This document shows, one piece after another, positions 11,855 to 64,000 of a DNA stretch of 64,000 nt (positions within the stretch are counted from its first letter, which is position 1; every line of letters begins with the position of its first letter). The stretch is from positions 211,971 to 275,970 of the IMG/VR virus record IMGVR_UViG_3300047157_000197. The stretch is one strand, 5' to 3'. Below the pieces are notes generated by a model. The model searched no databases and was not told the DNA's origin. It worked only from the letters and a program-made list of their open reading frames with translations. The position numbers and the translations under genes are program-made.

Positions 11855-12574
11855 ATGAGAAATATATTTATTTTAATTTTATGTGTATTATTCACACAAA
11901 ATACTATTGCACAAACTGTTGGTAAAATCAAGGCAGAAACATATCAAGCTGAATTTGAAAAAAAGAAATCAATTGATGATGTATCTGATTACGATGGTCC
12001 ATATATTCCTATAGCTTTACTTAATATATCTGCTAGTGATGGGGTTTACGAAATGTGGCCTGAGTTAAAGGATGCTAGAGTAGGTTTAGGTGTAACAAAC
12101 ATGGTAATAGAGTACTTGGATTGGACAAACAGATTCGAGTTCGTAGAGGAGAAGTCAGAGATTAAGGATAGAATGAAAAATCAATGGGTTGCATCAAGAA
12201 AGGGTGTTTCTCAAAATGAAGTTTATGGAATGGGTAAAGTAATGTTGGCGAATTATTTCGTTACAATAGAGATTTACGATTTCTCAGTTTCAGAAGATGA
12301 GGTTTTATCTTTAAAAGATGGTTCTAAACAAACACAAACAACTCGTTTAGGGTTGCAAGTTCGTTTTACTAATGCCGAGAATGGTACTTACTTTGTAGGT
12401 TCTGGTCTAGGTGAAGCAAATACAGTTAAGACTCAAGAGGGTTTGCTGGGATTAGATTTGGAGGAAATAAACTTCAGACAATCAGCAATTGGGGTAACTA
12501 CCAGAAAAGCATTAGAAACGGCTTCAGCAAGAATAGTAGCAAGAATGATTAGAAAAAAAATATTTCCAAACTAA
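11855..12574 (+). CDS. CsgG/HfaB family protein (curli secretion-channel-like)
   Basis: Signal peptide; GVTNMVIEYL..TNRFEFVEE, ANYFVTIEIYDF, LGLQVRFTNAENG match the CsgG fold pattern. Confidence 0.7.
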   Translation: MRNIFILILCVLFTQNTIAQTVGKIKAETYQAEFEKKKSIDDVSDYDGPYIPIALLNISASDGVYEMWPELKDARVGLGVTNMVIEYLDWTNRFEFVEEKSEIKDRMKNQWVASRKGVSQNEVYGMGKVMLANYFVTIEIYDFSVSEDEVLSLKDGSKQTQTTRLGLQVRFTNAENGTYFVGSGLGEANTVKTQEGLLGLDLEEINFRQSAIGVTTRKALETASARIVARMIRKKIFPN

Positions 12575-12577
12575 TGA

Positions 12578-14353
12578 ATGAGAAAACTACTATCGATACT
12601 TGCATTTTGGTTCATAACTAATCTTAGTTATGGACAAACATTCACACAGACATTTGTAGATAGATGTACTGGTGAAGTACAAGTTGTTACCGCTAATTTT
12701 ACAAGTGGTTCTGCTATCGTATCCTTTTACAACGAAGCTAAATTATTCACATACACACAATATACTAATGGTGAACTCCAACAATGGTTAGTTCAGAAAT
12801 ATGCATGGTGGGCTGCACTATCCCCATGTTCATCTGCGAGTAACGCAACCAACAACGCTAATAATACTGCAAACAACGCAACCAATAATACCAATTCAGG
12901 TTCAAGTGGTTCTAGTGGTGGTGGAGATAGTGGTTCAAGTGGTTCATCAGGTGGTAGTGGAGATAGTGGTGGTGGAAGTGGAGATTCAGGCGGTGGAGGT
13001 TCTGATGGTGGAAGTGGAGATTCTGGTGGCGGTGGTTCTGATGGCTCTGATGGTGGTGGTGGAGATTCTGATGGAGGAGGAGGCGATTCCGATGGCGGGG
13101 GTGGTGATTCCGATGGTGGCGGTGATTCCGATGGTGGAGATAGTGATGGTGGGTCTGGTGATTCCGATTCTGATGGTGGAGATAGTGATGGTGGAGATAG
13201 TGATTCTGATTCTGATGGTGGAGATAGTGATTCCGATTCCGATAGTGATTCTGATTCCGATAGTGATTCTGATTCCGATAGTGATTCTGATTCTGACTCT
13301 GATGGCGATAGTGATGATGATTCTGATTCTGACTCTGATGGCGATAGTGATGATGATTCTGATGGGGATTCTGATGATGATTCCGATGGAGATAGTGATG
13401 ATGAATCTGATGATGATTCCGATAGTGATGAAGATTCTGATGAATCTGATGAAGATAGTGAAGAAAGTGATGAGGAAGATAGTGAAGAAGAATCCGATGA
13501 AGAAGAAAAGGAAGAGGAAGAAGAAAGTGATGAAGAAGAGGAAGAAGAAGAAAAAGAGGAAGAAGAGGAAGAAGACGATGAAGAAGAAGATGAGGAAGAA
13601 GAAGATGAGGAAGATGAGGAAGATGAGGAAGACGAAAAAGATGAAGAAGATGAGGAAGAAGAAGAAGAAAAGAAAAAGAAATTTATGCCAATAGTATTGA
13701 AGGCAGATGTAATGTCAATGCAAGCTCTAACAAGAGAATACAACCAAGTTCTTGCAATTGGAGCATCACAAGCATCAATCTATGGTGATATAACAAATAC
13801 AGCAACTTTACAAGTATATGATAACTTAAAACAAGTTGGGTTATCATTGGGTAGAAGTAAAGTAAGTTTGAATGAAAATTATCAAGTAACTTGGGTAGAT
13901 GGAGCAAACGTATCTTATATGAGAAATTATCAGATGAACTCAACTACATTATCTCTCAGTAGAATGAAACCAATGGGTAAGTATGGAACTGTTGGATTGG
14001 GTGTTAGTTATTCATTTATGTTTGGTAAAGATGCTCTTGGAAATACAATGCCAAAAATGGGTACTATGGGATATAATGTTCTTTATACAAATATGGTAAA
14101 AATAAATGATAGAATAATGTACACACCAGCATTGATTGGTGCACAAAACCCATTATCTTATACAGAAAAAGTTGAGGGGTTCGATGCCTTTTCATCAACA
14201 TCAAAAGATTTTATAGGAATCCTTGCAAATTCCTTTACAATACAATTAACAAAAAGTTTTTCGTTTAATGCAGGTTGGACGATAATTTATAGTAGTAATG
14301 AGTTTGTTCCAATTATGAATTCGTTTATGATAGGAGCAAAGTTACCCTTTTAA
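12578..14353 (+). CDS. exported protein: N-terminal domain, Gly/Ser/Asp then Asp/Glu stalk, C-terminal beta-barrel-like domain
   Basis: Signal peptide; about 260 aa of low complexity; about 220 aa of amphipathic strands ending in terminal Phe (GAKLPF). Confidence 0.65.
   Translation: MRKLLSILAFWFITNLSYGQTFTQTFVDRCTGEVQVVTANFTSGSAIVSFYNEAKLFTYTQYTNGELQQWLVQKYAWWAALSPCSSASNATNNANNTANNATNNTNSGSSGSSGGGDSGSSGSSGGSGDSGGGSGDSGGGGSDGGSGDSGGGGSDGSDGGGGDSDGGGGDSDGGGGDSDGGGDSDGGDSDGGSGDSDSDGGDSDGGDSDSDSDGGDSDSDSDSDSDSDSDSDSDSDSDSDSDGDSDDDSDSDSDGDSDDDSDGDSDDDSDGDSDDESDDDSDSDEDSDESDEDSEESDEEDSEEESDEEEKEEEEESDEEEEEEEKEEEEEEDDEEEDEEEEDEEDEEDEEDEKDEEDEEEEEEKKKKFMPIVLKADVMSMQALTREYNQVLAIGASQASIYGDITNTATLQVYDNLKQVGLSLGRSKVSLNENYQVTWVDGANVSYMRNYQMNSTTLSLSRMKPMGKYGTVGLGVSYSFMFGKDALGNTMPKMGTMGYNVLYTNMVKINDRIMYTPALIGAQNPLSYTEKVEGFDAFSSTSKDFIGILANSFTIQLTKSFSFNAGWTIIYSSNEFVPIMNSFMIGAKLPF
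12896..13670 (+). repeat. coding low-complexity repeat: (GGGDSD)n, (SD)n, poly-D/E
   Basis: gattct/gatagt/gattcc hexamers then gaagaa/gatgag runs. Confidence 0.95.
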
Positions 14354-35952: not shown

Positions 35953-38050
35953 ATGAGTAAATACAACAATTCTTCCTTTTGGTATGATGATTTTGAAACA
36001 GATGACATCATCGTTAACCAACTTTCCGATACGGAAAGAAAATCCCTAGATTTATATAAGTTGGCTTCTTCTAAAAGAGCAATATCTAACTTTGTTAATA
36101 TTGTAACCAACGAATCTGTACCTGTTAAGTTTAAAGAAAGAGGTGATTCTTATACCGATGGTAAATCAGTTGTTATTGGTAGTAGAATTACAGAACCAAA
36201 AGATTTTGATGTGGCAGTTGGATTGGCACTTCACGAGGGTTCTCACATTAAACTTTCTGATTTCAAATTACTTAATGATATATACAATTTAGTTCCAACT
36301 CATGTAAAAGATGGGGGCTATTAAAAAAGGTATTAATAATTCAATTGAGATTATTAAGAATCTTTGGAACTATGTTGAAGATAGAAGAATTGATAACTTC
36401 GTATTCAAATCAGCACCTGGTTACAGAGACTATTACAGAAAAATGTACGATAAGTACTTCAATGATAAGTTAATCGATAAGGCACTCTTATCTGATGAAT
36501 ATACCGATGAAACGATTGATTCTTATATGTTCAGAATTATTAACTTACACAACAAAAATACCCAACTTTCTTCTTTGAAGGGATTGAGAGCAATTTATAG
36601 ATTAGTTGGATTGAATACAATTAGTAGATTAACCAACTCTAAAGAATCCTTTAATGTTGCACTTGCGATGTTCAATATAATTTTAAAAAACCTTAATCAA
36701 CCAACTGATATTGATAACCAACAAACCCCACAAAATGAAAATGGTGAGGGTTCTTCTTCTGATGAACAAGGTTCTGATGATGGACAAGGTGGTTCTTCTA
36801 ATGAGGGAATGAGTGATGATGAGTTCAATGAATTATTAGAATCAATTGGTGAATCTCCAATGGGTGGTGATTCTGATGAATCTCCAACTGGTGGTAATGG
36901 AATGGATGTTGGTAACTTACCTGATAACATGGAAGGTAAACCAAGTGAAGATAATTCTACTTCAACAAACTCAGTTCAACTTTCAGATAGACAAAAAGAT
37001 TTACTTAAAAAGAAAATAGAGAAACAAAAGAAGTTCATGGAAGGTGATATTCAGAAAACTTCACTTAATAAAACAGATTCTAAGAACCTAAACGCTATTG
37101 AAGAGAGTGGTTCTGAAATGAAAGAAGTTGGTAAGGATGTTAAAAAAGGTTACTATGGTAATGAATCTGTTCAATGTATTGTAGTTAAGAAACTTACTAA
37201 GGGATTATTTGAATCAACAATGTTTCCAATGACATCAACAAACTATTGGAATCAAGATACACCAATGAGAATGGATTATGTAGAAGAGGTTCAGAAAGGA
37301 ATCAAACTTGGTACAATGTTAGGTAAGAAACTTCAAGTGAGAGGTGAAGATAGAACAACAGTTTTCAACAGACAGAAAGTTGGTAGAATTGATAAGAGAA
37401 TGATTTCATCTTTAGGATTTGGTAATGAAAATGTATTCCAATTCTCAGAAATAGATTCTTACAAAAAGGCTAACTTACATATCTCAATAGATGCCAGTTC
37501 ATCTATGAATGGTGATAAGTGGAGAAATACGATGATTAATGTAGTTGCAATGTGTAAGGCAGTTGATATGATTCCTAACTTACAAGTTCAAGTAACTTTC
37601 AGATGTACTCAAAATGAGAAACCATATATCGTTATGGCTTACGATTCTAAAACAGAAAAGTTTTCTAAAGTAAAACAAATGTTCGGTGGTTTAAGACCAA
37701 ATGGTACAACACCAGAAGGATTATGTTTTGAAGCAATTATGAAATCTTTTATTCCAATTAATAATGATATGGATTCTTACTTCTTAAATCTTTCAGATGG
37801 ACAACCTTACTTCGGTGGAAGAGGGTTCTACTACGCTGGTGATGCTGCTGAAAGACATACAGGTAAGATGATTAAAATGATTGAGAGTATGGGAATCAAA
37901 ACCTTATCCTACTTCGTATCAGATTATGGTGTACAAAGTTACGAAAAAAGAAGTTTCCAAACAATGTATGGAAAAGGAGCTAAGTTTGTAGATGTTACAA
38001 ATCTTAACCAAATCACGAAAACAATGAACCAATTATTTTTACAAAAATAA
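35953..38050 (+). CDS. HExxH + vWA domain protein (CobT-like MoxR partner; one-base insertion in G-run near 36315)
   Basis: LHEGSH, NYVEDRRI, MIDAS DASSSM, TPE, LSDG; removing one G joins the two ORFs. Confidence 0.8.
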
Positions 38051-38072
38051 ATGAAAAATAAGTACGAAAAAA

Positions 38073-38119
38073 TTTGTTTATTCCAATTATTTTTCGTATA
38101 TTTACAAAGTAAATGAGTG
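38073..38119 (+). promoter_or_regulatory. promoter cassette shared with 35887-35933
   Basis: TTTG-N20-TATATTTA; followed by TGGGGA/TCCCCA hairpin. Confidence 0.8.
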
Positions 38120-38168
38120 GGGAATTATCCCCAAGATAAATAAAGTATAAACCTTAAAACAAATAATT

Positions 38169-39392
38169 ATGAATGAAATGAATGAATTTAAAGTTGGATA
38201 TGTTTCCACAGAAGTGTACAAAGTTGAACAGTTTGGTAATACCTGGAAACTGATAGATTCACAAGGTACTAAAGTTGGTACTCTTGGAGCAACAACATTA
38301 ACAAGAAAAACAGCATTTAAAGAAGGTAAGGCACTTCAAGCATACATCAATAAGAATGGTAAGAAAACTTACAGAAAAGTTGATATGAATGTTTATAACT
38401 CCTTAGTTATTCCTATGAATACAGACCAAGGTGGTGTTCAGTTTGAAGATAAATCAGACCACACTGCAATAAAAGATTTTATCCACCAAGGTTCGGTATC
38501 TCTAAAACCAACTGAATTGGTTATGGAAGAATTGAAATGGAAATATCTTATCAGAAGTGCTGTGAGAGCTAAAAATATTATGATGACTGGACCGAGTGGT
38601 TGTGGTAAAACTATGGCTTCCAAAGCTTTAGTGAACGCACTCGATAGACCAGATTTCTATTTCAACCTTGGGGCAACTCAAGACCCGAGAGCTACCTTAA
38701 TTGGTAACACTCACTTCGATAAACAAAAAGGAACATACTTTTCAGAATCCGCTTTTGTTACGGCAATCAAAACTCCAAACGCAGTTATTCTGTTAGATGA
38801 GTTATCGAGAGCTCATCCAGATGCGTGGAACATCTTAATGACTGTACTTGACCAAGGACAGAGATACTTGAGATTAGATGAGGCTGATGGTTCACCAATT
38901 GTGAATGTGGCTGAAGGTGTTACTTTCATCGCTACCGCTAACATCGGTAATGAATACACATCAACAAGAGTTATGGATAGAGCAATCTTAGATAGATTTG
39001 TTACTATTGAAATGGATGTTCTTGATGATGTTAAAGAATTAGGATTATTAAAGTTTATGTTTCCTGAAGTTAAGGAATATGATTTGAAAGCAATCGCAGA
39101 AATCGCTCATCACACTAGAACTCAATCAATGAATGAGAATGGTAAGTTAACTTCAATGGTTTCCACCAGAGCATCTGTTGAGATGGCTGGGTTAATCTAC
39201 GATGGTTTCGAACTTAACGAAGCAGCTGAGATTTCAATCTATCCTTTCTTTTCTCAAGATGGTGGTGTTGATTCGGAAAGAACTTACATCAAACAATTGG
39301 TTCAGAAATACCAAATGGATGAAAATGGTGAACCTCTATTCAAAGAAGTAGATGACACCGAAAGTAATGAGGATGATATCCCTCAGTTTTAA
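38169..39392 (+). CDS. MoxR/CbbQ/CobS-like AAA+ ATPase
   Basis: GPSGCGKT, ILLDE, ATAN, DRAILDRF, STR. Confidence 0.9.
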   Translation: MNEMNEFKVGYVSTEVYKVEQFGNTWKLIDSQGTKVGTLGATTLTRKTAFKEGKALQAYINKNGKKTYRKVDMNVYNSLVIPMNTDQGGVQFEDKSDHTAIKDFIHQGSVSLKPTELVMEELKWKYLIRSAVRAKNIMMTGPSGCGKTMASKALVNALDRPDFYFNLGATQDPRATLIGNTHFDKQKGTYFSESAFVTAIKTPNAVILLDELSRAHPDAWNILMTVLDQGQRYLRLDEADGSPIVNVAEGVTFIATANIGNEYTSTRVMDRAILDRFVTIEMDVLDDVKELGLLKFMFPEVKEYDLKAIAEIAHHTRTQSMNENGKLTSMVSTRASVEMAGLIYDGFELNEAAEISIYPFFSQDGGVDSERTYIKQLVQKYQMDENGEPLFKEVDDTESNEDDIPQF

Positions 39393-42633: not shown

Positions 42634-44262
<1,629 letters not shown>

Positions 44263-47040: not shown

Positions 47041-48402
47041 ATGAAATTATTATTAGGAGATTGTATTGACAAACTTAAAGAGTTAGATGACAATAGTGTA
47101 GATAGTATTGTTACAGACCCACCATATGGGTTATCCTTTATGGGTAAAAAATGGGATTATGATGTTCCCTCTCAAGAAATCTTTGAGGAATGTTTAAGAG
47201 TTCTAAAACCAGGTGGCCATCTATTATCATTTGCCGGTTCACGAACTTATCACAGAATGGCAGTTAGAGTAGAAGATGCTGGATTTGAGATAAGAGACCA
47301 GATAATGTGGATATATGGTTCAGGTTTTCCAAAATCTATGAATATAGGAAAAGCTATGGATAAAGTACAAGGTAATGAAAGAAAGGTAATTGGTAAACAA
47401 AACTACTCAATTCCAAAAGCAGATAACACTATACAAGCCAGTTCCTATGGTATAAGTGGAGGTTTATTGAAAGATGGAAAAAAAGCAGAAAGATTAGTAC
47501 CTGATATAACCAAAGGAAACTCTGAATACGAGGGTTGGGGAACTGCTCTCAAACCAGCTCACGAACCAATTGTAATGGCAAGAAAACCACTTTCAGAAAA
47601 AACTGTTGTAGATAATGTATTAGAATGGGGAACTGGTGGAATTAATGTAGAGGAAAGTAGAATACCATATAAATCAAAAGATGATATGGAAATTAGAAAA
47701 AATACACATCGTGAAACAAATAAATTAGGAGATGGTAATTTTGGTGGAGGTAAATATTCACAACCTGTTGAAAGTGGCAGATTTCCTTCAAACATAATCT
47801 TTGATGAAGAAGCAGGTAAGATACTTGATGAACAAAGTGGTATATCCAAATCCACAGGTGGTAGAAGTGGAAACAAAGAAGGAGTTGGTCAAAATGGAAT
47901 ATATGGTCAATATAGTGGAGAAGTAAGAGATGAAAATCCTGGTCTTGGTGATATTGGTGGAGCATCTCGTTTCTTTTATTGTCCTAAAACTTCTAAAACT
48001 GATAGAAACGAAGGATTAGAAGATTTTGAAATAAAACAAACTGTTGGTGGAGGTGGTGGTATAGGTGATTATCAAGATGACGTAAATAGTGCAAGTGGTA
48101 AGTTTGGTAGTGAAAAAGCACCAAGTAAGAACAATCACCCAACAGTCAAACCAACAGATTTGATGTTATACCTTATTCGCTTAGTTACTCCAAAAGGTGG
48201 AACTACTTTAGACCCATTTATGGGTAGTGGTTCAACTGGTAAAGCTGCAACTCGTGGTGGATTTGATTTTATAGGTATTGAAAGAGAAAAAGATTATATG
48301 GAAATTGCAAAAACAAGAATCCAATATGAAAAAGATAATCCTTATAATGAAGAAAAGAAAGAGCGAGTAAAAATAAATAAAAATGCAAATAAATTTTTCT
48401 AG
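47041..48402 (+). CDS. N6A/N4C DNA methyltransferase, paralog of 39461
   Basis: DPPY, HPTVKP, DPFMGSGSTG. Confidence 0.9.
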   Translation: MKLLLGDCIDKLKELDDNSVDSIVTDPPYGLSFMGKKWDYDVPSQEIFEECLRVLKPGGHLLSFAGSRTYHRMAVRVEDAGFEIRDQIMWIYGSGFPKSMNIGKAMDKVQGNERKVIGKQNYSIPKADNTIQASSYGISGGLLKDGKKAERLVPDITKGNSEYEGWGTALKPAHEPIVMARKPLSEKTVVDNVLEWGTGGINVEESRIPYKSKDDMEIRKNTHRETNKLGDGNFGGGKYSQPVESGRFPSNIIFDEEAGKILDEQSGISKSTGGRSGNKEGVGQNGIYGQYSGEVRDENPGLGDIGGASRFFYCPKTSKTDRNEGLEDFEIKQTVGGGGGIGDYQDDVNSASGKFGSEKAPSKNNHPTVKPTDLMLYLIRLVTPKGGTTLDPFMGSGSTGKAATRGGFDFIGIEREKDYMEIAKTRIQYEKDNPYNEEKKERVKINKNANKFF

Positions 48403-61873: not shown

Positions 61874-62014
61874 ATGAAACAATGTAGAAAATGTAATATA
61901 GAATTACAAGTATTTAATCCTTCAAGTGGACGATATTATATTTGTGGTAAATGTAATGATGTAACTTATCCTACCGAAGATATAGATAAGGTAGTAGAAA
62001 GAGGAAGAGATTAA
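61874..62014 (+). CDS. small zinc-ribbon protein
   Basis: CRKC...CGKC; TATTTATA upstream. Confidence 0.5.
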   Translation: MKQCRKCNIELQVFNPSSGRYYICGKCNDVTYPTEDIDKVVERGRD

Positions 62015-62520
62015 CTAACCCTATATACATAATACCCTATATACAGGTATACCGAATCCCACTACCGCATACTCTATACTCCCATACTCCCATACCAACA
62101 GTACCCCTACTCCAGACTCAACCCCAAACCCTTTCCCCCATAATAACCAAAACGATAACACCCTCGAACTCCCGATACTCACCTAAAACTTTCCCTATAA
62201 CTCTCTCTATTCCAATGTGTTAAATGGGGTAAAAGGGGGAGCTGTGAAAGTACGAGGTTTTTAATCCTTTTTAAGAGGTCTGAGATTGAATCCGTACCAA
62301 GATATTACACCCTACCCTAATTAACCACTATACCCTCTTATATGGAGTGTACAAGGGAGTTGGGAGTGCACATACTCACTATGGGGTTGAATATTACACC
62401 CTATGTCATATTATGATATGATGTAGTTCCCACTTTCTACCACCCGATACCACTATATCACTATGGAGAGGAGCCTCAAGCGTATGTGTTGTTGGAGGTT
62501 ATTTTTTTCCGGAGTAACTA

Positions 62521-62679
62521 TGACACATTGTCACACCCCCTACTTGGGACTCAATTGCATTATTCGTAATTCTACACTATGACACCTTGTCACCCGATTA
62601 TGGATTATTTAAAATATTGGAATAAACCGCCCATTTCATTGTCATATTCGTAAATCGATGATACTATGACACATTGTCA
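62521..62679. repeat. three CTA-TGACAC(A/C)TTGTCA palindromes
   Basis: 62521-62533, 62580-62592, 62667-62679. Confidence 0.9.
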
Positions 62680-62688
62680 TGAGATTTA

Positions 62689-62720
62689 TTTGTTTATTTA
62701 AAAAAATTGTCGTATCTTTA
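62689..62720 (+). promoter_or_regulatory. Bacteroidota sigma70-type promoter
   Basis: TTTG-N20-TATCTTTA. Confidence 0.6.
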
Positions 62721-62819
62721 GGGTGGTTGTGGGTGGGAGTGTACACATCAGTATATAGGGGTCACCAGCGGCACTGGAGTACTGGAGTGGAAAATAAATT
62801 AAAAATAAGTCCTAAATTG

Positions 62820-62851
62820 TTTGGTAGTCTCAGTTATTTTTCGTATATTAG
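62820..62851 (+). promoter_or_regulatory. Bacteroidota sigma70-type promoter
   Basis: TTTG-N20-TATATTAG. Confidence 0.65.
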
Positions 62852-62860
62852 TCATGTAAT

Positions 62861-63079
62861 ATGACTGATATGAGAGATATAAAGAAATTAGTTCCCTATA
62901 TAGGGTTAGGTGTAGTGATTGCCATTATACTGTTGTTGGTACCGATGATTATTCGAGGTTTTTTCGCGATATTGTTACTTTTGATGAAAAATCCACTTGA
63001 ATTCCTTATTGGAACCACGATTTTGCTCCTGTGTATGTATATAGGGGAGAAGATAATAAATAAACCATTAAATAAATAA
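62861..63079 (+). CDS. small membrane protein
   Basis: Mostly hydrophobic; promoter upstream. Confidence 0.6.
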   Translation: MTDMRDIKKLVPYIGLGVVIAIILLLVPMIIRGFFAILLLLMKNPLEFLIGTTILLLCMYIGEKIINKPLNK

Positions 63080-63082
63080 AAC

Positions 63083-63415
63083 ATGAGAAACATTACCAAA
63101 ATCCTCGACAGAAGTCAGAGGTTATTCCTAGCTGGGAATATGAAAAAGAGTTATTCTATCGCGATTGATGGGATTACCGAACTATCCCAAGTAAACAGAA
63201 GATTAAACGAAGAAACCCAAGGTTGGGATTTAAAGAAAGCGTACGATTACAAGGGTACTTACAAGATTCAAGGTAAAACTCTTACCAATTGGATGGAGAA
63301 ATTATGGACAATAGTTGAAAATACTGGAGTTGAACCGATTGTAGAGGAGTATGAAACTGATATGATTCAGTACAGTATAGATAATACACAGACGTTAGTA
63401 AAGAATAGAAAATAA
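63083..63415 (+). CDS. hypothetical protein
   Basis: ORF track. Confidence 0.65.
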   Translation: MRNITKILDRSQRLFLAGNMKKSYSIAIDGITELSQVNRRLNEETQGWDLKKAYDYKGTYKIQGKTLTNWMEKLWTIVENTGVEPIVEEYETDMIQYSIDNTQTLVKNRK

Positions 63416-63426
63416 TTCTAATTTTA

Positions 63427-63458
63427 TTAGGATATATCAAATAAATTTTGTATATTAG
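63427..63458 (+). promoter_or_regulatory. Bacteroidota sigma70-type promoter
   Basis: TTAG-N20-TATATTAG; no ORF follows. Confidence 0.7.
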
Positions 63459-63464
63459 CCCCTG

Positions 63465-63828
63465 TAGTTGAGGTTGATGATTGAGAATATAGGGTTTGAT
63501 TCCCTCTCTAGTTAATCTCTAAAGACCTCCTCTTAATAGAATTAGAGGCCGTCAGTAGTGTTGGGAGATACACCTACTATAAAAACTGAATCTCTTTTAA
63601 AGAAATGTGAGCTGTTGGTGGTATTTTCTCACTCTAAACAACGAACCACCACATATAACGATGATGAGTCACAGGCGATGAAATGATACTACGCTCGGAA
63701 TCGAATTTCATCCACAGATTAGGGGTTTTCTGTGGAGATTAATAGGAGCCAACTCAACTCTCTCCTATCCTAAGTGTTCAATCTGAACCACCCACTAAGT
63801 TATGGCTTCCTTCTTAGTGGGTTTTTTT
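63465..63828 (+). ncRNA. candidate structured non-coding RNA of unknown family
   Basis: Promoter- and terminator-bounded, no ORF, many complementary segments including 5'/3' long-range pairing. Confidence 0.6.
63790..63828 (+). terminator. intrinsic terminator
   Basis: ACCCACTAAG...CTTAGTGGGT followed by a T-run. Confidence 0.8.
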
Positions 63829-63887
63829 ATTCCCTATACTCTGGAGCGGGAACATGACATAATGTCAGATGCTGCTCCTGTACCTAT

Positions 63888-63907
63888 TGTTAATAACTTG
63901 TTAATAA
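63888..63907. repeat. tandem TGTTAATAA (DnaA-box-like TTATTAACA on the minus strand)
   Basis: 63888-63896 and 63899-63907. Confidence 0.45.
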
Positions 63908-63932
63908 CTTTTTTAAAATAAACCTCTTTTTA

Positions 63933-63964
63933 TTAGGTTTTTACAAAAAATAGTCGTATATTAC
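63933..63964 (+). promoter_or_regulatory. Bacteroidota sigma70-type promoter
   Basis: TTAG-N20-TATATTAC. Confidence 0.65.
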
Positions 63965-64000
63965 ATATGTAATAAGTAATAATCCTTAAAACTAAAAAAT

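What the first reader, a model, noticed from the sequence alone, without database searches (positions are those of the whole stretch)
63465..63828. Candidate novel large structured ncRNA
Seen: its own promoter and terminator, no ORF. Complementary segments: GTTGAGGTTG 63467-76 with CAACTCAAC 63750-58, which lies in the loop of ATAGGAG 63742-48/CTCCTAT 63762-68; TTAATCTC 63512-19 with GAGATTAA 63735-42; AGGG/CCCT; CCTCT/AGAGG; AGTAG-TGT/ACAC-CTACT; GTGAG 63607-11/CTCAC 63628-32 whose loop GGTGGT matches ACCACC 63645-50; GATGAAAT/ATTTCATC; TCCACAGA/TCTGTGGA. I see no tRNA, tmRNA or RNase P hallmarks. Inference: a multi-pseudoknot or switchable early phage RNA.
Basis: partly seen in the sequence, partly recalled or inferred. 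Interest (0 to 1): 0.82.

Follow-up and report, generated by a model that had tools for sequence, protein, structure and literature searches.

The report
New modular pseudoknotted marine-phage RNA family
The flagged stretch is a real non-coding RNA gene of about 370 bases in an uncultured marine jumbo phage; it belongs to a widespread, richly folded RNA family that matches no Rfam 15 family and whose function is unknown.

Summary
The locus (window 63427-63828, + strand) is a self-contained transcription unit. It has a phage promoter motif, about 370 nt with no conserved ORF, and an intrinsic terminator.

At least 98 related loci occur in marine metagenomes. Only one hit came from 185,579 bacterial and archaeal genomes, on a 2.3-kb MAG contig. 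Rfam 15 and ARAGORN match nothing.

Covariation supports these elements:
- a 5' hairpin (P1) with an invariant internal loop
- a hairpin and two H-type pseudoknots in a swappable central part
- two hairpins (P2, P3) whose stems vary but whose loops do not
- a new long-range pseudoknot between GGAGCCA (63746-52) and the loop of the terminator hairpin (63803-09)

The two long-range "closing" helices and GATGAAAT/ATTTCATC do not.

The centre varies from near zero to about 450 nt. In some relatives it carries a tRNA-like module ending in ACCA.

Four seawater metatranscriptomes hold contigs over the early genes and the RNA, but none over the adjacent non-coding stretch.

In architecture it most resembles the phage RNAs GOLLD and ROOL (conserved scaffold, variable linker, tRNA association), but it is not a member of either. 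Function is inferred only: a trans-acting early RNA with a conserved scaffold that displays variable cargo.

The parts
63427..63458 (+). Promoter-like element: TTAGGATAT (63427-35), AT-rich spacer, TTTTGTATATTAG (63446-58). The transcription start is predicted a few bases downstream, about 63459-63466, and has not been mapped.
   Evidence: The same bipartite motif occurs 9 times on the + strand of the window, mostly in front of genes. It is conserved at a fixed distance upstream of P1 in all complete family members.
63472..63517 (+). P1, the conserved 5' hairpin. Basal helix P1a is 63472-78/63511-17. An invariant internal loop has GATT (63479-82) opposite TA (63509-10). Helix P1b (GAG/CUC) is 63483-85/63506-08. 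The optional apical stem P1c (AGGG/CCCT) is 63491-94/63502-05, with loop TTTGATT.
   Evidence: RNAalifold on 48 distinct sequences: 6 of 10 pairs keep pairing through changes on both sides, and many G-U pairs fix the strand. P1c covaries as AGGG/CCCT, GGAG/CTCC and GGGG/CCCC.
63524..63553 (+). Ha, a hairpin of the variable central part: 63524-33/63544-53, with a 2x2 mismatch.
   Evidence: Three of its 8 pairs show changes on both sides, and the stem sequence is completely replaced in L107 and L231.
63554..63596 (+). PKb, an H-type pseudoknot. The stem is 63554-61/63570-78. The loop GGGAGAT (63563-69) pairs with ATCTCTT (63590-96).
   Evidence: Stem cells are 97% paired with one compensatory pair. 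The loop helix is 94% paired, with G-U changing to A-U or U-A.
63607..63651 (+). PKc, an H-type pseudoknot. S1 is GTGAG/CTCAC (63607-11/63628-32). S2 is TGGTGGT/ACCACCA (63616-22/63645-51).
   Evidence: 24 family members carry this module in 9 distinct S1/S2 combinations, for example AGAGG/CCTCT with TGGTAGTT/AACTACCA and GTGAG/CTCAC with GGTAATT/AATTACC.
63659..63703 (+). P2, a hairpin with variable closing stems (63659-62/63700-03 and 63666-68/63694-96) and inner pairs 63673-74/63689-90. Its near-invariant apical loop (63675-88) is part of the motif AGGYGATGAAA(T)GATAC.
   Evidence: The motif is present in 70 of 72 distinct family members. The closing stems covary: GAG/CTC, GGTG/CACC, ACGAA/TTCGT. 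The same motif stands alone, closed by other stems, in unrelated intergenic places of other marine phages.
63712..63735 (+). P3, a hairpin with stem CCACAGA/TCTGTGG (63712-18/63729-35) and a conserved loop TTAGGGGTTT (63719-28).
   Evidence: Four stem pairs have 4-23 sequences changed on both sides. These are the top mutual-information pairs, with 95-100% standard pairing. The loop GGGG/TTT is invariant.
63746..63752 (+). 5' strand (GGAGCCA) of the long-range pseudoknot PK_T, which pairs with the terminator loop.
   Evidence: 25 distinct complementary pair types were found, for example GAGACCA/TGGTCTC, GGAGGCT/AGCCTCC and GGGGACTT/AAGTCTCC. Mean helix score is 6.99 against 6.03 (sd 0.16, maximum 6.47) when partners are swapped between sequences.
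63760..63775 (+). Single-stranded block CTCTCCTATCCTAAGT, identical in all members. It lies within the 20-mer used to fish the family, so its invariance among distant members is by ascertainment.
   Evidence: It is invariant in the relatives found independently through the neighbouring protein. The flanking GAACC(A/G)CCCA, which was not part of the search pattern, is also nearly invariant.
63776..63788 (+). P5, a small hairpin GTTC/GAAC (63776-79/63785-88) with a loop of 4-6 nt.
   Evidence: The stem never varies, so it is neither supported nor refuted. The loop length varies by single bases, which rules out a conserved reading frame.
63790..63828 (+). Intrinsic terminator: stem 63790-99/63813-22, a 13-nt loop holding the PK_T 3' strand TGGCTTC (63803-09), and a T-run at 63822-28.
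   Evidence: The distal stem pairs covary: A-U/U-A/G-C in 20 sequences and C-G/U-A in 10. Two metatranscriptome contigs lie on the window up to 63825 and 63835, just at or after the T-run.

Best explanation
Window 63427-63828 is an independent early gene for a non-coding RNA of about 370 nt. It belongs to an uncatalogued family that so far is confined to uncultured marine phages. The source contig is 276 kb; two other IMG/VR contigs carrying the RNA are 74 and 141 kb.

Shown:
- A conserved scaffold consists of the 5' hairpin P1 with an invariant internal loop, hairpins P2 and P3 with variable stems and invariant loops, and a 3' domain.
- In the 3' domain a purine-rich strand (GGAGCCA) pairs with the loop of the intrinsic terminator, forming a large H-type pseudoknot.
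- Between P1 and P2 lies a swappable centre. In this phage it holds one hairpin and two H-type pseudoknots. In relatives it holds nothing, one pseudoknot, or a 150-190-nt tRNA-like module.

Inferred:
- The RNA acts in trans as a compact folded particle, made at the very start of infection.
- The terminator-loop pseudoknot locks the 3' end, giving stability against 3' exonucleases and forming the core of the fold.
- The invariant loops are docking sites for a protein or for other RNA. These contacts could be tertiary or between molecules, as in GOLLD and ROOL.
- The fast-changing centre is cargo that the scaffold displays.

What the cargo acts on is not known.
For: Transcription unit: promoter motif, terminator, no conserved ORF.

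Family:
- 98 metagenome stretches hold the core 20-mer.
- These give 101 complete units, 72 of them distinct, 230-711 nt long.
- Only 1 hit came from 185,579 species genomes, and 3 contigs from IMG/VR.

Structure:
- P1; P3 and terminator.
- Central modules: 90% of cells paired against 40-49% when partners are slid; 13 pairs changed on both sides against 1-6; 0 of 500 shuffles reach the observed values.
- PK_T and PKc.
- Many G-U pairs fix the + strand.

Modularity. The metatranscriptome contigs themselves show module swaps at this locus (joints).

Expression: 20 listed runs hold the sequence, 18 of them labelled RNA-Seq. In 4 of 4 laid runs, contigs cover parts of 62926-63910 and none of 62000-62870.

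Specificity: a covariance model of the 3' domain scores 109-134 bits on members and 22 bits or less on 60 control loci.

Analogy: GOLLD has a conserved 3' region, a less conserved 5' region and a variable linker that sometimes holds tRNAs. ROOL and GOLLD are phage-borne and lie near tRNA islands (bioRxiv 10.1101/2024.12.08.627333). Here, tRNA genes lie about 1-3 kb downstream in many relatives.
Against: - No function has been tested. Trans action, 3'-end protection, docking and cargo display are all inference.
- The metatranscriptome evidence comes from assembled contigs without strand or true depth. One contig runs from the upstream gene through the RNA to 63910, so co-transcription and read-through are possible.
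- Depth over the RNA is similar to that of its neighbours, not strikingly higher.
- The family was fished with an exact 20-mer, so conservation of that block among distant members is ascertained, and more divergent members were not sampled.
- The invariant partners (P5, P1b, GGAG:CUCUCC) cannot be tested by covariation.
- No further tertiary covariation was found.
- In this phage's own genome no tRNA gene lies within 6 kb downstream.
Confidence: 0.55

Rival explanations
1. Defence decoy or sponge. The conserved scaffold stabilises and presents a rapidly diversifying centre (pseudoknots, tRNA-like modules). The centre mimics host or phage RNAs and so soaks up a host RNA-targeting immune nuclease or an RNA-binding host factor early in infection.
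For: - Placement among the first early genes, with a strong promoter.
- Extreme module turnover even between strains in one sample (joints).
- tRNA-like cargo with a T-arm, an acceptor-like stem and in some cases an encoded ACCA.
- From general knowledge, not tested here: phages counter tRNA-cleaving defences with their own tRNAs, and RNA decoys such as pseudo-ToxI and solitary CRISPR repeats are known.
Against: - No defence system or target has been identified.
- The window's own cargo is pseudoknots, not a tRNA mimic.
- Module turnover could be neutral.
- The invariant loops point to a constant partner rather than an arms race.
Confidence: 0.15
2. Precursor transcript. The unit is a carrier that RNase P, 3' processing enzymes or RNase III/E cut into smaller stable RNAs (tRNA-like pieces, pseudoknot pieces). 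P1, P2 and the 3' domain would act as processing or stability signals.
For: - The tRNA-like modules have a 7-bp acceptor-like stem next to a canonical T-arm, and in L156 and L180 an encoded A-CCA. That is the shape RNase P and CCA-handling enzymes recognise (established knowledge).
- The P2 motif also stands alone at ends of other transcripts.
- From memory: phage T4 makes stable RNAs 'species 1 and 2' from its tRNA cluster.
Against: - ARAGORN calls no tRNA in any of 72 units.
- The window's variant has no tRNA-like module.
- The metatranscriptome contigs show no processing sites (table 6: none), although contigs could not show them.
Confidence: 0.12
3. Cis-regulatory element. The 3' pseudoknot and terminator form a conditional terminator (riboswitch-like or protein-controlled) that sets read-through into the downstream early genes. 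Alternatively, the whole element is a structured 3' UTR of the upstream 110-aa gene.
For: - One strand (GGAG) can pair either with the invariant CUCUCC or with the terminator loop.
- One metatranscriptome contig is continuous from 63053 to 63910, across both the upstream gene and the terminator.
- No terminator separates the 110-aa gene from the RNA.
Against: - The unit always carries its own promoter, whatever gene precedes it.
- The next gene has its own copy of the same promoter 120 nt further on (63933-63).
- 220-700 nt of covarying structure is far more than an attenuator needs.
- PK_T pairs with the loop and does not compete with the terminator stem.
Confidence: 0.1
4. A degenerate or unusual tRNA, tmRNA or RNase P RNA gene.
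For: - T-arm-like hairpin at 63491-505.
- A string of pseudoknots, as in tmRNA.
- Length of about 370 nt.
- tRNA-like modules in relatives.
Against: - ARAGORN and all Rfam models are negative.
- At relaxed thresholds ARAGORN gives mutually inconsistent calls.
- The T-like loop TTTGATT is replaced by TTAAACT, GTGAAA and others in relatives, or is absent altogether.
- There is no acceptor stem, no 3' CCA and no conserved tag frame in the window's RNA.
Confidence: 0.02
5. A DNA-level element (origin, packaging site or protein-binding array) rather than an RNA.
For: It lies about 600 bp from a repeat-rich non-coding region (62000-62860) and within the 2-kb repeat at the contig ends.
Against: - The covariation keeps G-U pairs, which would be C-A on the other strand.
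- Promoter and terminator face one way.
- It is present in RNA libraries where the neighbouring non-coding DNA is not.
Confidence: 0.02

Closest known systems
[quoted passage not shown]
   Same: It is borne by phages and prophages. It has a conserved part plus a less conserved part joined by a variable linker that sometimes contains tRNAs, and it often lies near tRNA genes. It has many pseudoknots, and hairpins with variable stems and invariant loops. Its function is unknown. Here there is likewise a conserved scaffold, a variable centre with tRNA-like modules in some members, and tRNA genes 1-3 kb away in many relatives.
   Different: No match to the Rfam GOLLD model. This RNA is much smaller (about 220-700 nt, 370 here, against about 800). 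Here both ends are conserved and the 3' end is a terminator-loop pseudoknot. Multimer or cage formation has not been tested. The embedded modules are tRNA-like, not bona fide tRNAs.
ROOL RNA (Rumen-Originating, Ornate, Large)
   Same: It is a phage or prophage RNA near tRNA islands, with several pseudoknots and a variable internal linker. No protein partner is known.
   Different: No match to the Rfam ROOL model. The habitat (marine), size and motifs differ. Assembly state is unknown.
tmRNA
   Same: Similar length, a string of H-type pseudoknots, and (in relatives only) a tRNA-like domain with acceptor-like stem, T-arm and ACCA.
   Different: No tmRNA call by ARAGORN or by the Rfam tmRNA models. 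There is no conserved tag reading frame. No G3-U70 is seen by eye in the acceptor-like stems of L101 and L156. The window's RNA lacks the tRNA-like domain, and its 3' end is a terminator with a U-run, not CCA.
Phage T4 stable RNAs 'species 1 and 2' (rnaC/rnaD); recalled from memory, not tested
   Same: Phage-encoded stable RNAs of unknown function, associated with tRNA genes and with partial tRNA-like features.
   Different: They are much shorter (about 120-140 nt).
phi29 packaging RNA (pRNA); recalled from memory, not tested
   Same: A phage non-coding RNA transcribed from an early promoter near a genome end. Its secondary structure is conserved while its sequence diverges, and its loops serve contacts between molecules.
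   Different: pRNA is about 170 nt and restricted to phi29-like podoviruses with protein-primed genomes. There is no structural resemblance, and no evidence links this RNA to packaging.

Membership tests
tRNA | Cloverleaf with acceptor stem, D, anticodon and T arms, detected by ARAGORN or Rfam RF00005 | tested here: not met
   ARAGORN finds 0 genes in the window and 0 in 72 family units. Rfam tRNA hits occur only at genuine tRNA genes elsewhere in relatives' loci.
tRNA | Conserved T-loop (UUCRANY) in a 5-bp T-stem | tested here: not met
   The window's hairpin at 63491-505 has a 4-bp stem and loop TTTGATT. Relatives have TTAAACT, GTGAAA or TTCGCTA there, or lack the hairpin altogether. A 15-mer search with it returned chance-level hits plus some real tRNAs.
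tmRNA | tRNA-like domain formed by the 5' and 3' ends, with a 3' CCA | tested here: not met
   The ends of the window RNA do not pair. The 3' end is a terminator with a U-run. ARAGORN and Rfam are negative.
tmRNA | Conserved tag reading frame with resume codon and stop | tested here: not met
   Single-base indels in the P5 loop and module swaps break every frame. The 'tags' ARAGORN proposes at relaxed thresholds differ from sequence to sequence.
RNase P RNA | Conserved regions CR-I to CR-V, the P4 pseudoknot, and a match to the Rfam RNase P models | tested here: not met
   No Rfam match, even at E up to 10 on the 701-nt stretch.
GOLLD / ROOL ornate phage RNAs | Match to the family's covariance model (Rfam) | tested here: not met
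   No hit at gathering or E-value thresholds for the window or for nine relatives scanned at E-value thresholds.
GOLLD / ROOL ornate phage RNAs | Conserved domain(s) plus a variable linker that can hold tRNA; phage-borne; near tRNA genes | tested here: met
   Conserved P1, P2, P3 and 3' domain; a centre from about 0 to 450 nt, with tRNA-like modules in some members; phage contigs only; tRNA genes 1-3 kb downstream in many relatives but not in this genome. This is a shared architecture, not proof of homology.
GOLLD / ROOL ornate phage RNAs | Homo-oligomeric cage assembly | not testable with these tools
   This needs native gels, SEC-MALS or cryo-EM of the transcript.
Intrinsic (Rho-independent) terminator | GC-rich stem followed directly by a U-run at the end of the transcription unit | tested here: met
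   A 10-bp stem (63790-99/63813-22) plus T7. The stem covaries. Two metatranscriptome contigs lie on the window up to 63825 and 63835.
H-type pseudoknot | Hairpin loop pairs with a downstream single strand; both helices are kept by compensatory change | tested here: met
   PKc has 9 S1/S2 combinations. PKb is supported. PK_T exceeds partner-swapped controls by about 6 sd.
UAA/GAN internal-loop motif (recalled from memory as a lead) | 5'-UAA-3' opposite 5'-GAN-3' in an internal loop flanked by helices | tested here: inconclusive
   The P1 loop reads U-GAUU on the 5' strand and UA-R on the 3' strand, invariant in 48 sequences. The sequence pattern fits when R = A. The three-dimensional motif cannot be tested here.

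The most novel reading that the evidence does not exclude
This is the first member seen of a new class of modular 'scaffold-plus-cargo' phage RNAs. An invariant pseudoknotted chassis (P1, P2, P3 and the terminator-loop knot) folds or self-assembles, like a miniature GOLLD or ROOL. It presents interchangeable RNA cargo, namely tRNA mimics and pseudoknots. In the first minutes of infection this cargo neutralises host RNA-directed immunity or captures a host translation or RNA-decay factor. Cargo swapping between co-existing strains would then record an RNA-level arms race.
Probability: 0.2. Interest if true: 0.88.

Novelty: new variant of a known kind. Interest (0 to 1): 0.72.

Why it matters
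Large, intricately folded non-coding RNAs without a known function are rare. Each earlier one (OLE, GOLLD, ROOL, raiA) has opened new biology, most recently RNA-only cages.

This family has several useful properties:
- It is abundant in the sea, with at least 98 loci and sequence in about 20 metatranscriptome-labelled runs.
- It is confined to phages.
- At 220-700 nt it is compact enough for synthesis, probing and cryo-EM.
- Its natural variants amount to a ready-made deletion and swap series, from a minimal 215-nt form to forms with tRNA-like inserts.

It also shows two structural ideas worth testing. One is a terminator whose loop is tied back into the body of the RNA. The other is a small hairpin motif (AGGYGAUGAAA(U)GAUAC) reused on its own in other phages.

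If the variable centre proves to be displayed cargo, the family would give a tractable model for what the variable linkers of GOLLD and ROOL do.

Tried and rejected
1. Single-sequence folding: z = -1.17, uninformative.
2. blastn of the locus and tblastn of a 697-aa window protein against 50,697 phage records: no match, so no cultured relative.
3. Exact search for the T-arm-like 15-mer: about 100 hits, a mix of chance matches and real tRNA T-arms, no relatives.
4. ARAGORN with relaxed thresholds and introns: inconsistent tRNA and permuted-tmRNA calls with different anticodons and 'tags' in near-identical sequences. Rejected as noise.
5. Mini-ORF idea (AUG AAA UGA inside the P2 loop): rejected because half the family reads GAUGAAAGAUAC, without the UGA.
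6. P2 loop as an anti-Shine-Dalgarno mimic (AGGUGAU): the C/U polymorphism breaks the match in half the members, and the phage barely uses SD sites (16 of 71 genes against a 12% background).
7. 11-nt tetraloop-receptor idea (CCUAAG with UAUGG in the terminator loop): UAUGG is not conserved.
9. My first automatic test of PKc failed because the script often took the second helix for the hairpin. It was replaced by an explicit two-helix search.
10. Column-based counting of PK_T on MAFFT or CM alignments is blurred by register shifts. It was replaced by an alignment-free partner-swap test.
11. Mutual-information scan of the 3' domain: only P3 and the terminator stand out, with no further tertiary pair.
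12. Search for antisense targets of the invariant block or the P2 loop within the 64-kb window: none.
13. Pfam and PHROG scans of neighbouring early proteins: no RNA-binding or other informative domain.
14. Whether the family is among the 10,006 unnamed candidates of Fremin et al. 2023 (PMC10690425) could not be checked, because no supplementary files are held.
Full report
**Context.** The window is the last 64 kb of IMG/VR contig IMGVR_UViG_3300047157_000197, which is 275,970 bp long. Window 61978-64000 repeats the first 2,023 bp of the contig, so the downstream sequence could be read from locus L002. All genes lie on the + strand and GC is about 30%. The genome encodes a GroEL-type chaperonin and other proteins of the kind large phages carry. 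No cultured phage is related at the DNA or protein level. The last 2 kb of the window are richer in G+C.

**The observation.**
- Upstream of the element stands a bipartite motif, TTAGGATAT, about 15 nt, TTTTGTATATTAG.
- The same motif occurs nine times on the + strand of the window, mostly just before genes. One copy lies in front of the preceding early operon (62820-50) and one in front of the next gene (63933-63).
- The element ends in a 10-bp G+C-rich stem with a 13-nt loop and seven T (63790-63828). The loop length explains why the simple scan missed it.
- The longest ORF is 42 aa.
- The minimum-free-energy fold is no better than shuffles, with z = -1.17. The sequence alone therefore proves nothing.
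- Rfam 15 finds nothing at curated or permissive thresholds, and ARAGORN finds no tRNA or tmRNA.

**Relatives.** The 110-aa protein encoded just upstream has homologues at 62-91% identity.
- The contigs that carry the closer homologues hold the same non-coding unit in length variants of 306, 315, 380, 399 and 444 nt. The more distant ones, at 62-65% identity, lack it.
- Alignment showed conserved ends and a centre that is swapped wholesale.
- An 18-mer from one conserved hairpin also turned up in unrelated intergenic places of other marine phages.
- A 20-mer from the 3' part (63760-79) occurs in 98 marine metagenome stretches. It occurs in three IMG/VR contigs of 74, 141 and 276 kb.
- Among one genome for each of 185,579 bacterial and archaeal species it occurs only once, on a 2.3-kb MAG contig.
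- From all loci I extracted 101 complete units, 72 of them distinct, 230-711 nt long when counted from the promoter motif.
- Nearly all of these loci have the promoter-like motif 18-28 nt before the conserved TGATTGAGA motif of the 5' hairpin, and a terminator at the end.
- The neighbouring genes are small early ORFs without known domains. They are partly syntenic between members.

**Structure supported by comparison** (window coordinates).
- **P1.** Helix 63472-78/63511-17, then an invariant internal loop (GAUU opposite UA), then GAG/CUC, then an optional apical stem. Six of ten pairs keep pairing through changes on both sides in 48 sequences. Frequent G-U pairs fix the + strand.
- **Ha** (63524-53), **PKb** (63554-96) and **PKc** (63607-51). 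On 16 window-like sequences, 90% of cells pair against 40-49% when partners are slid. Thirteen pairs change on both sides against 1-6 in the slid controls. None of 500 shuffles reaches the observed values.
- **P2** (63659-703) has covarying closing stems and a near-invariant loop motif, AGGYGAUGAAA(U)GAUAC. The motif is present in 70 of 72 members.
- **P3** (63712-35) has a freely covarying stem and an invariant loop UUA(A)GGGGUUU.
GGAGCCA (63746-52) pairs with UGGCUUC (63803-09) in the terminator loop. Across the family this pair takes 25 complementary forms. Its score exceeds partner-swapped controls by about six standard deviations.
- The **terminator stem** itself covaries in its distal half.
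- A covariance model of the 3' domain separates members (109-134 bits) from 60 control loci (22 bits or less).

**What did not hold.**
- The two long-range helices that would close the molecule (63467-76 with 63750-58, and 63512-19 with 63735-42) both use bases of the well-supported local helix P1a.
- Those two helices are also lost in close relatives, and a family-wide test found no leader-to-3' pairing.
- GATGAAAT/ATTTCATC is lineage-specific. GATGAAAT belongs to the invariant P2 loop.
- ATAGGAG/CTCCTAT cannot be excluded, because CUCUCC never varies. Its purine strand, however, is the one that covaries with the terminator loop. The two pairings are mutually exclusive and are the only candidate for a switch.
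- The T-arm look of 63491-505 is superficial, since its loop is not conserved.

**The variable centre.** Minimal members such as L189 (about 215 nt of RNA) go straight from P1 to P2. Others insert one to several pseudoknots. One subgroup (L101, L129, L156, L176 and others) inserts a 150-190-nt tRNA-like module.
- The module has a 7-bp acceptor-like stem, a long helix bearing four conserved hairpins, and a canonical T-arm.
- In L156 and L180 it also has an encoded A-CCA.
- Several of its stems covary.
- ARAGORN calls none of these modules a tRNA.
- True tRNA genes lie about 1-3 kb downstream in many relatives, though not in this genome.

**Expression.** Twenty of the listed runs hold the sequence. 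Eighteen of them are labelled RNA-Seq and all but one are seawater or marine metatranscriptomes.
- In four runs, assembled contigs cover parts of 62926-63910, which span the two early genes and the RNA.
- None covers 62000-62870, the non-coding stretch upstream of the first promoter.
- Two contigs stop matching the window at the terminator, at 63825 and 63835.
- Other contigs carry alternative central modules at this same locus.
- These are contigs without strand or true depth. One of them reads through the terminator to 63910. This is therefore good but not conclusive evidence of transcription, and it gives no transcript ends.

**Interpretation.**
- Shown: a discrete, conserved, strand-specific, highly structured non-coding unit of a phage-only family, absent from Rfam 15.
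- Inferred: it acts in trans early in infection; the terminator-loop pseudoknot stabilises the 3' end and forms the core of the fold; the invariant loops on variable stems are contact sites; the centre is interchangeable cargo.
- Invariant loops on variable stems mark tertiary and inter-subunit contacts in OLE and GOLLD.
- The closest parallels are GOLLD and ROOL: phage-borne, conserved domain(s) plus a variable linker that may hold tRNAs, tRNA neighbourhood, function unknown. The covariance models of both fail to match, so this is an architectural analogy and not membership.
- Rivals are a defence decoy, a processed precursor, a conditional terminator or 3' UTR, a degenerate tRNA or tmRNA, and a DNA element. 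Each is listed with its evidence.
- Weak Shine-Dalgarno use and the -33/-7-like promoter shape suggest a Bacteroidota-like host. That is inference only.

**Novelty.** This is a new RNA family of a known general kind, the large ornate phage RNAs. It has two unusual features: the terminator-loop pseudoknot and the reusable P2 motif. I could not check whether it is among the unnamed candidates of a 2023 virome-wide screen (PMC10690425).

Noticed in passing
window 62000-62860: About 850 bp with no credible ORF, just upstream of the first early promoter. It starts with a C-rich tract (GC skew down to -0.84) that repeats CCCTATATACA and ACTCCCATAC. It then holds three copies of the palindrome-bearing repeat CTATGACAC(A/C)TTGTCA, at about 62518, 62577 and 62664. 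No metatranscriptome contig lies on it. It could be an origin, a terminus or a regulatory region.
   Followed up: partly
window 63829-63932: Between the RNA's terminator and the next promoter lies GGAGC...GCTCC (about 63843-79) enclosing the palindrome ATGACATAATGTCA, followed by the direct repeat TTGTTAATAAC x2. TGACA-N4-TGTCA palindromes and the TTAATAAC repeats recur after the terminator in many family members. They look like operator sites for a DNA-binding regulator of the next early promoter.
   Followed up: partly
window 61978-64000 versus L002 1-2023: The two copies of the contig's 2,023-bp end repeat are not identical. They differ as CCCC/CCC at 63459-62 and GACTGAT/GAGAGAT near 62873. 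The end repeat therefore looks like a wrap-around assembly of mixed strains or a true terminal repeat with variants. Three of four RNA runs carry the CCC form.
   Followed up: partly
L117, L119, L121, L122, L124 (176-kb and other contigs) and L123:5099-5116(-): The P2 loop motif (ACAGGCGATGAAATGATACT) stands alone in other marine phages. In each case it sits in a hairpin closed by a different stem. In one it follows a 63-aa ORF and precedes a T-rich run. In another it lies directly behind a GTATATTTAC promoter. It behaves as a portable RNA module.
   Followed up: partly
L173:1077-1096 and 1635-1654: One metagenome contig carries two tandem copies of the RNA gene, 558 bp apart. L135, L141, L177, L179 and L227 carry two GGNGATGAAA-type motifs within one unit.
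   Followed up: no
L105:3334-4140 (ENA contig_3638, 277,956 bp): A partial duplication. The 110-aa gene, the promoter, P1 and the first 90 nt or so of the tRNA-like module are followed by unrelated sequence (a called 143-aa ORF without Pfam match). Then come a second copy of the 110-aa gene and the complete RNA. This is either a rearrangement or an assembly chimera.
   Followed up: partly
L156:3182-3400, L180:2124-2360 (and L101, L129, L176, L198, L223): The tRNA-like cargo modules share conserved hairpin loops (GGGUAACUCC, CUGUUGUGG, GGUUCGAAAC) as well as the T-arm. L156 and L180 encode CUAUCUU-A-CCA after the T-arm, which is a complete tRNA-type 3' end inside a longer transcript.
   Followed up: partly
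L107:4631-4702; L113:2540-2613; L114:1439-1512: A tRNA-Cys(GCA) gene sits about 0.9 kb downstream of the RNA in one lineage. In more distant relatives that lack the RNA, it sits directly after a 285-aa Endonuclease_7-domain ORF that follows the 125-aa homologue.
   Followed up: no
window 42646-44262, 36311-39392, 346-1728, 47041-48402: The phage encodes a GroEL-type chaperonin (PHROG E = 4e-172). It also encodes a 579-aa protein with a weak CobT-like PHROG match beside an AAA_5 (MoxR/CbbQ-type) ATPase, a HAD-phosphatase/polynucleotide-kinase-like protein that may serve RNA repair, and a DNA methyltransferase.
   Followed up: no
window 12001-14000: A local G+C peak (0.39 against 0.30) with strong GC skew. 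Long ORFs are nested on both strands inside the 591-aa gene (12793-13743 on the - strand, 12801-13694 on the + strand), which suggests compositionally biased or repetitive coding sequence.
   Followed up: no
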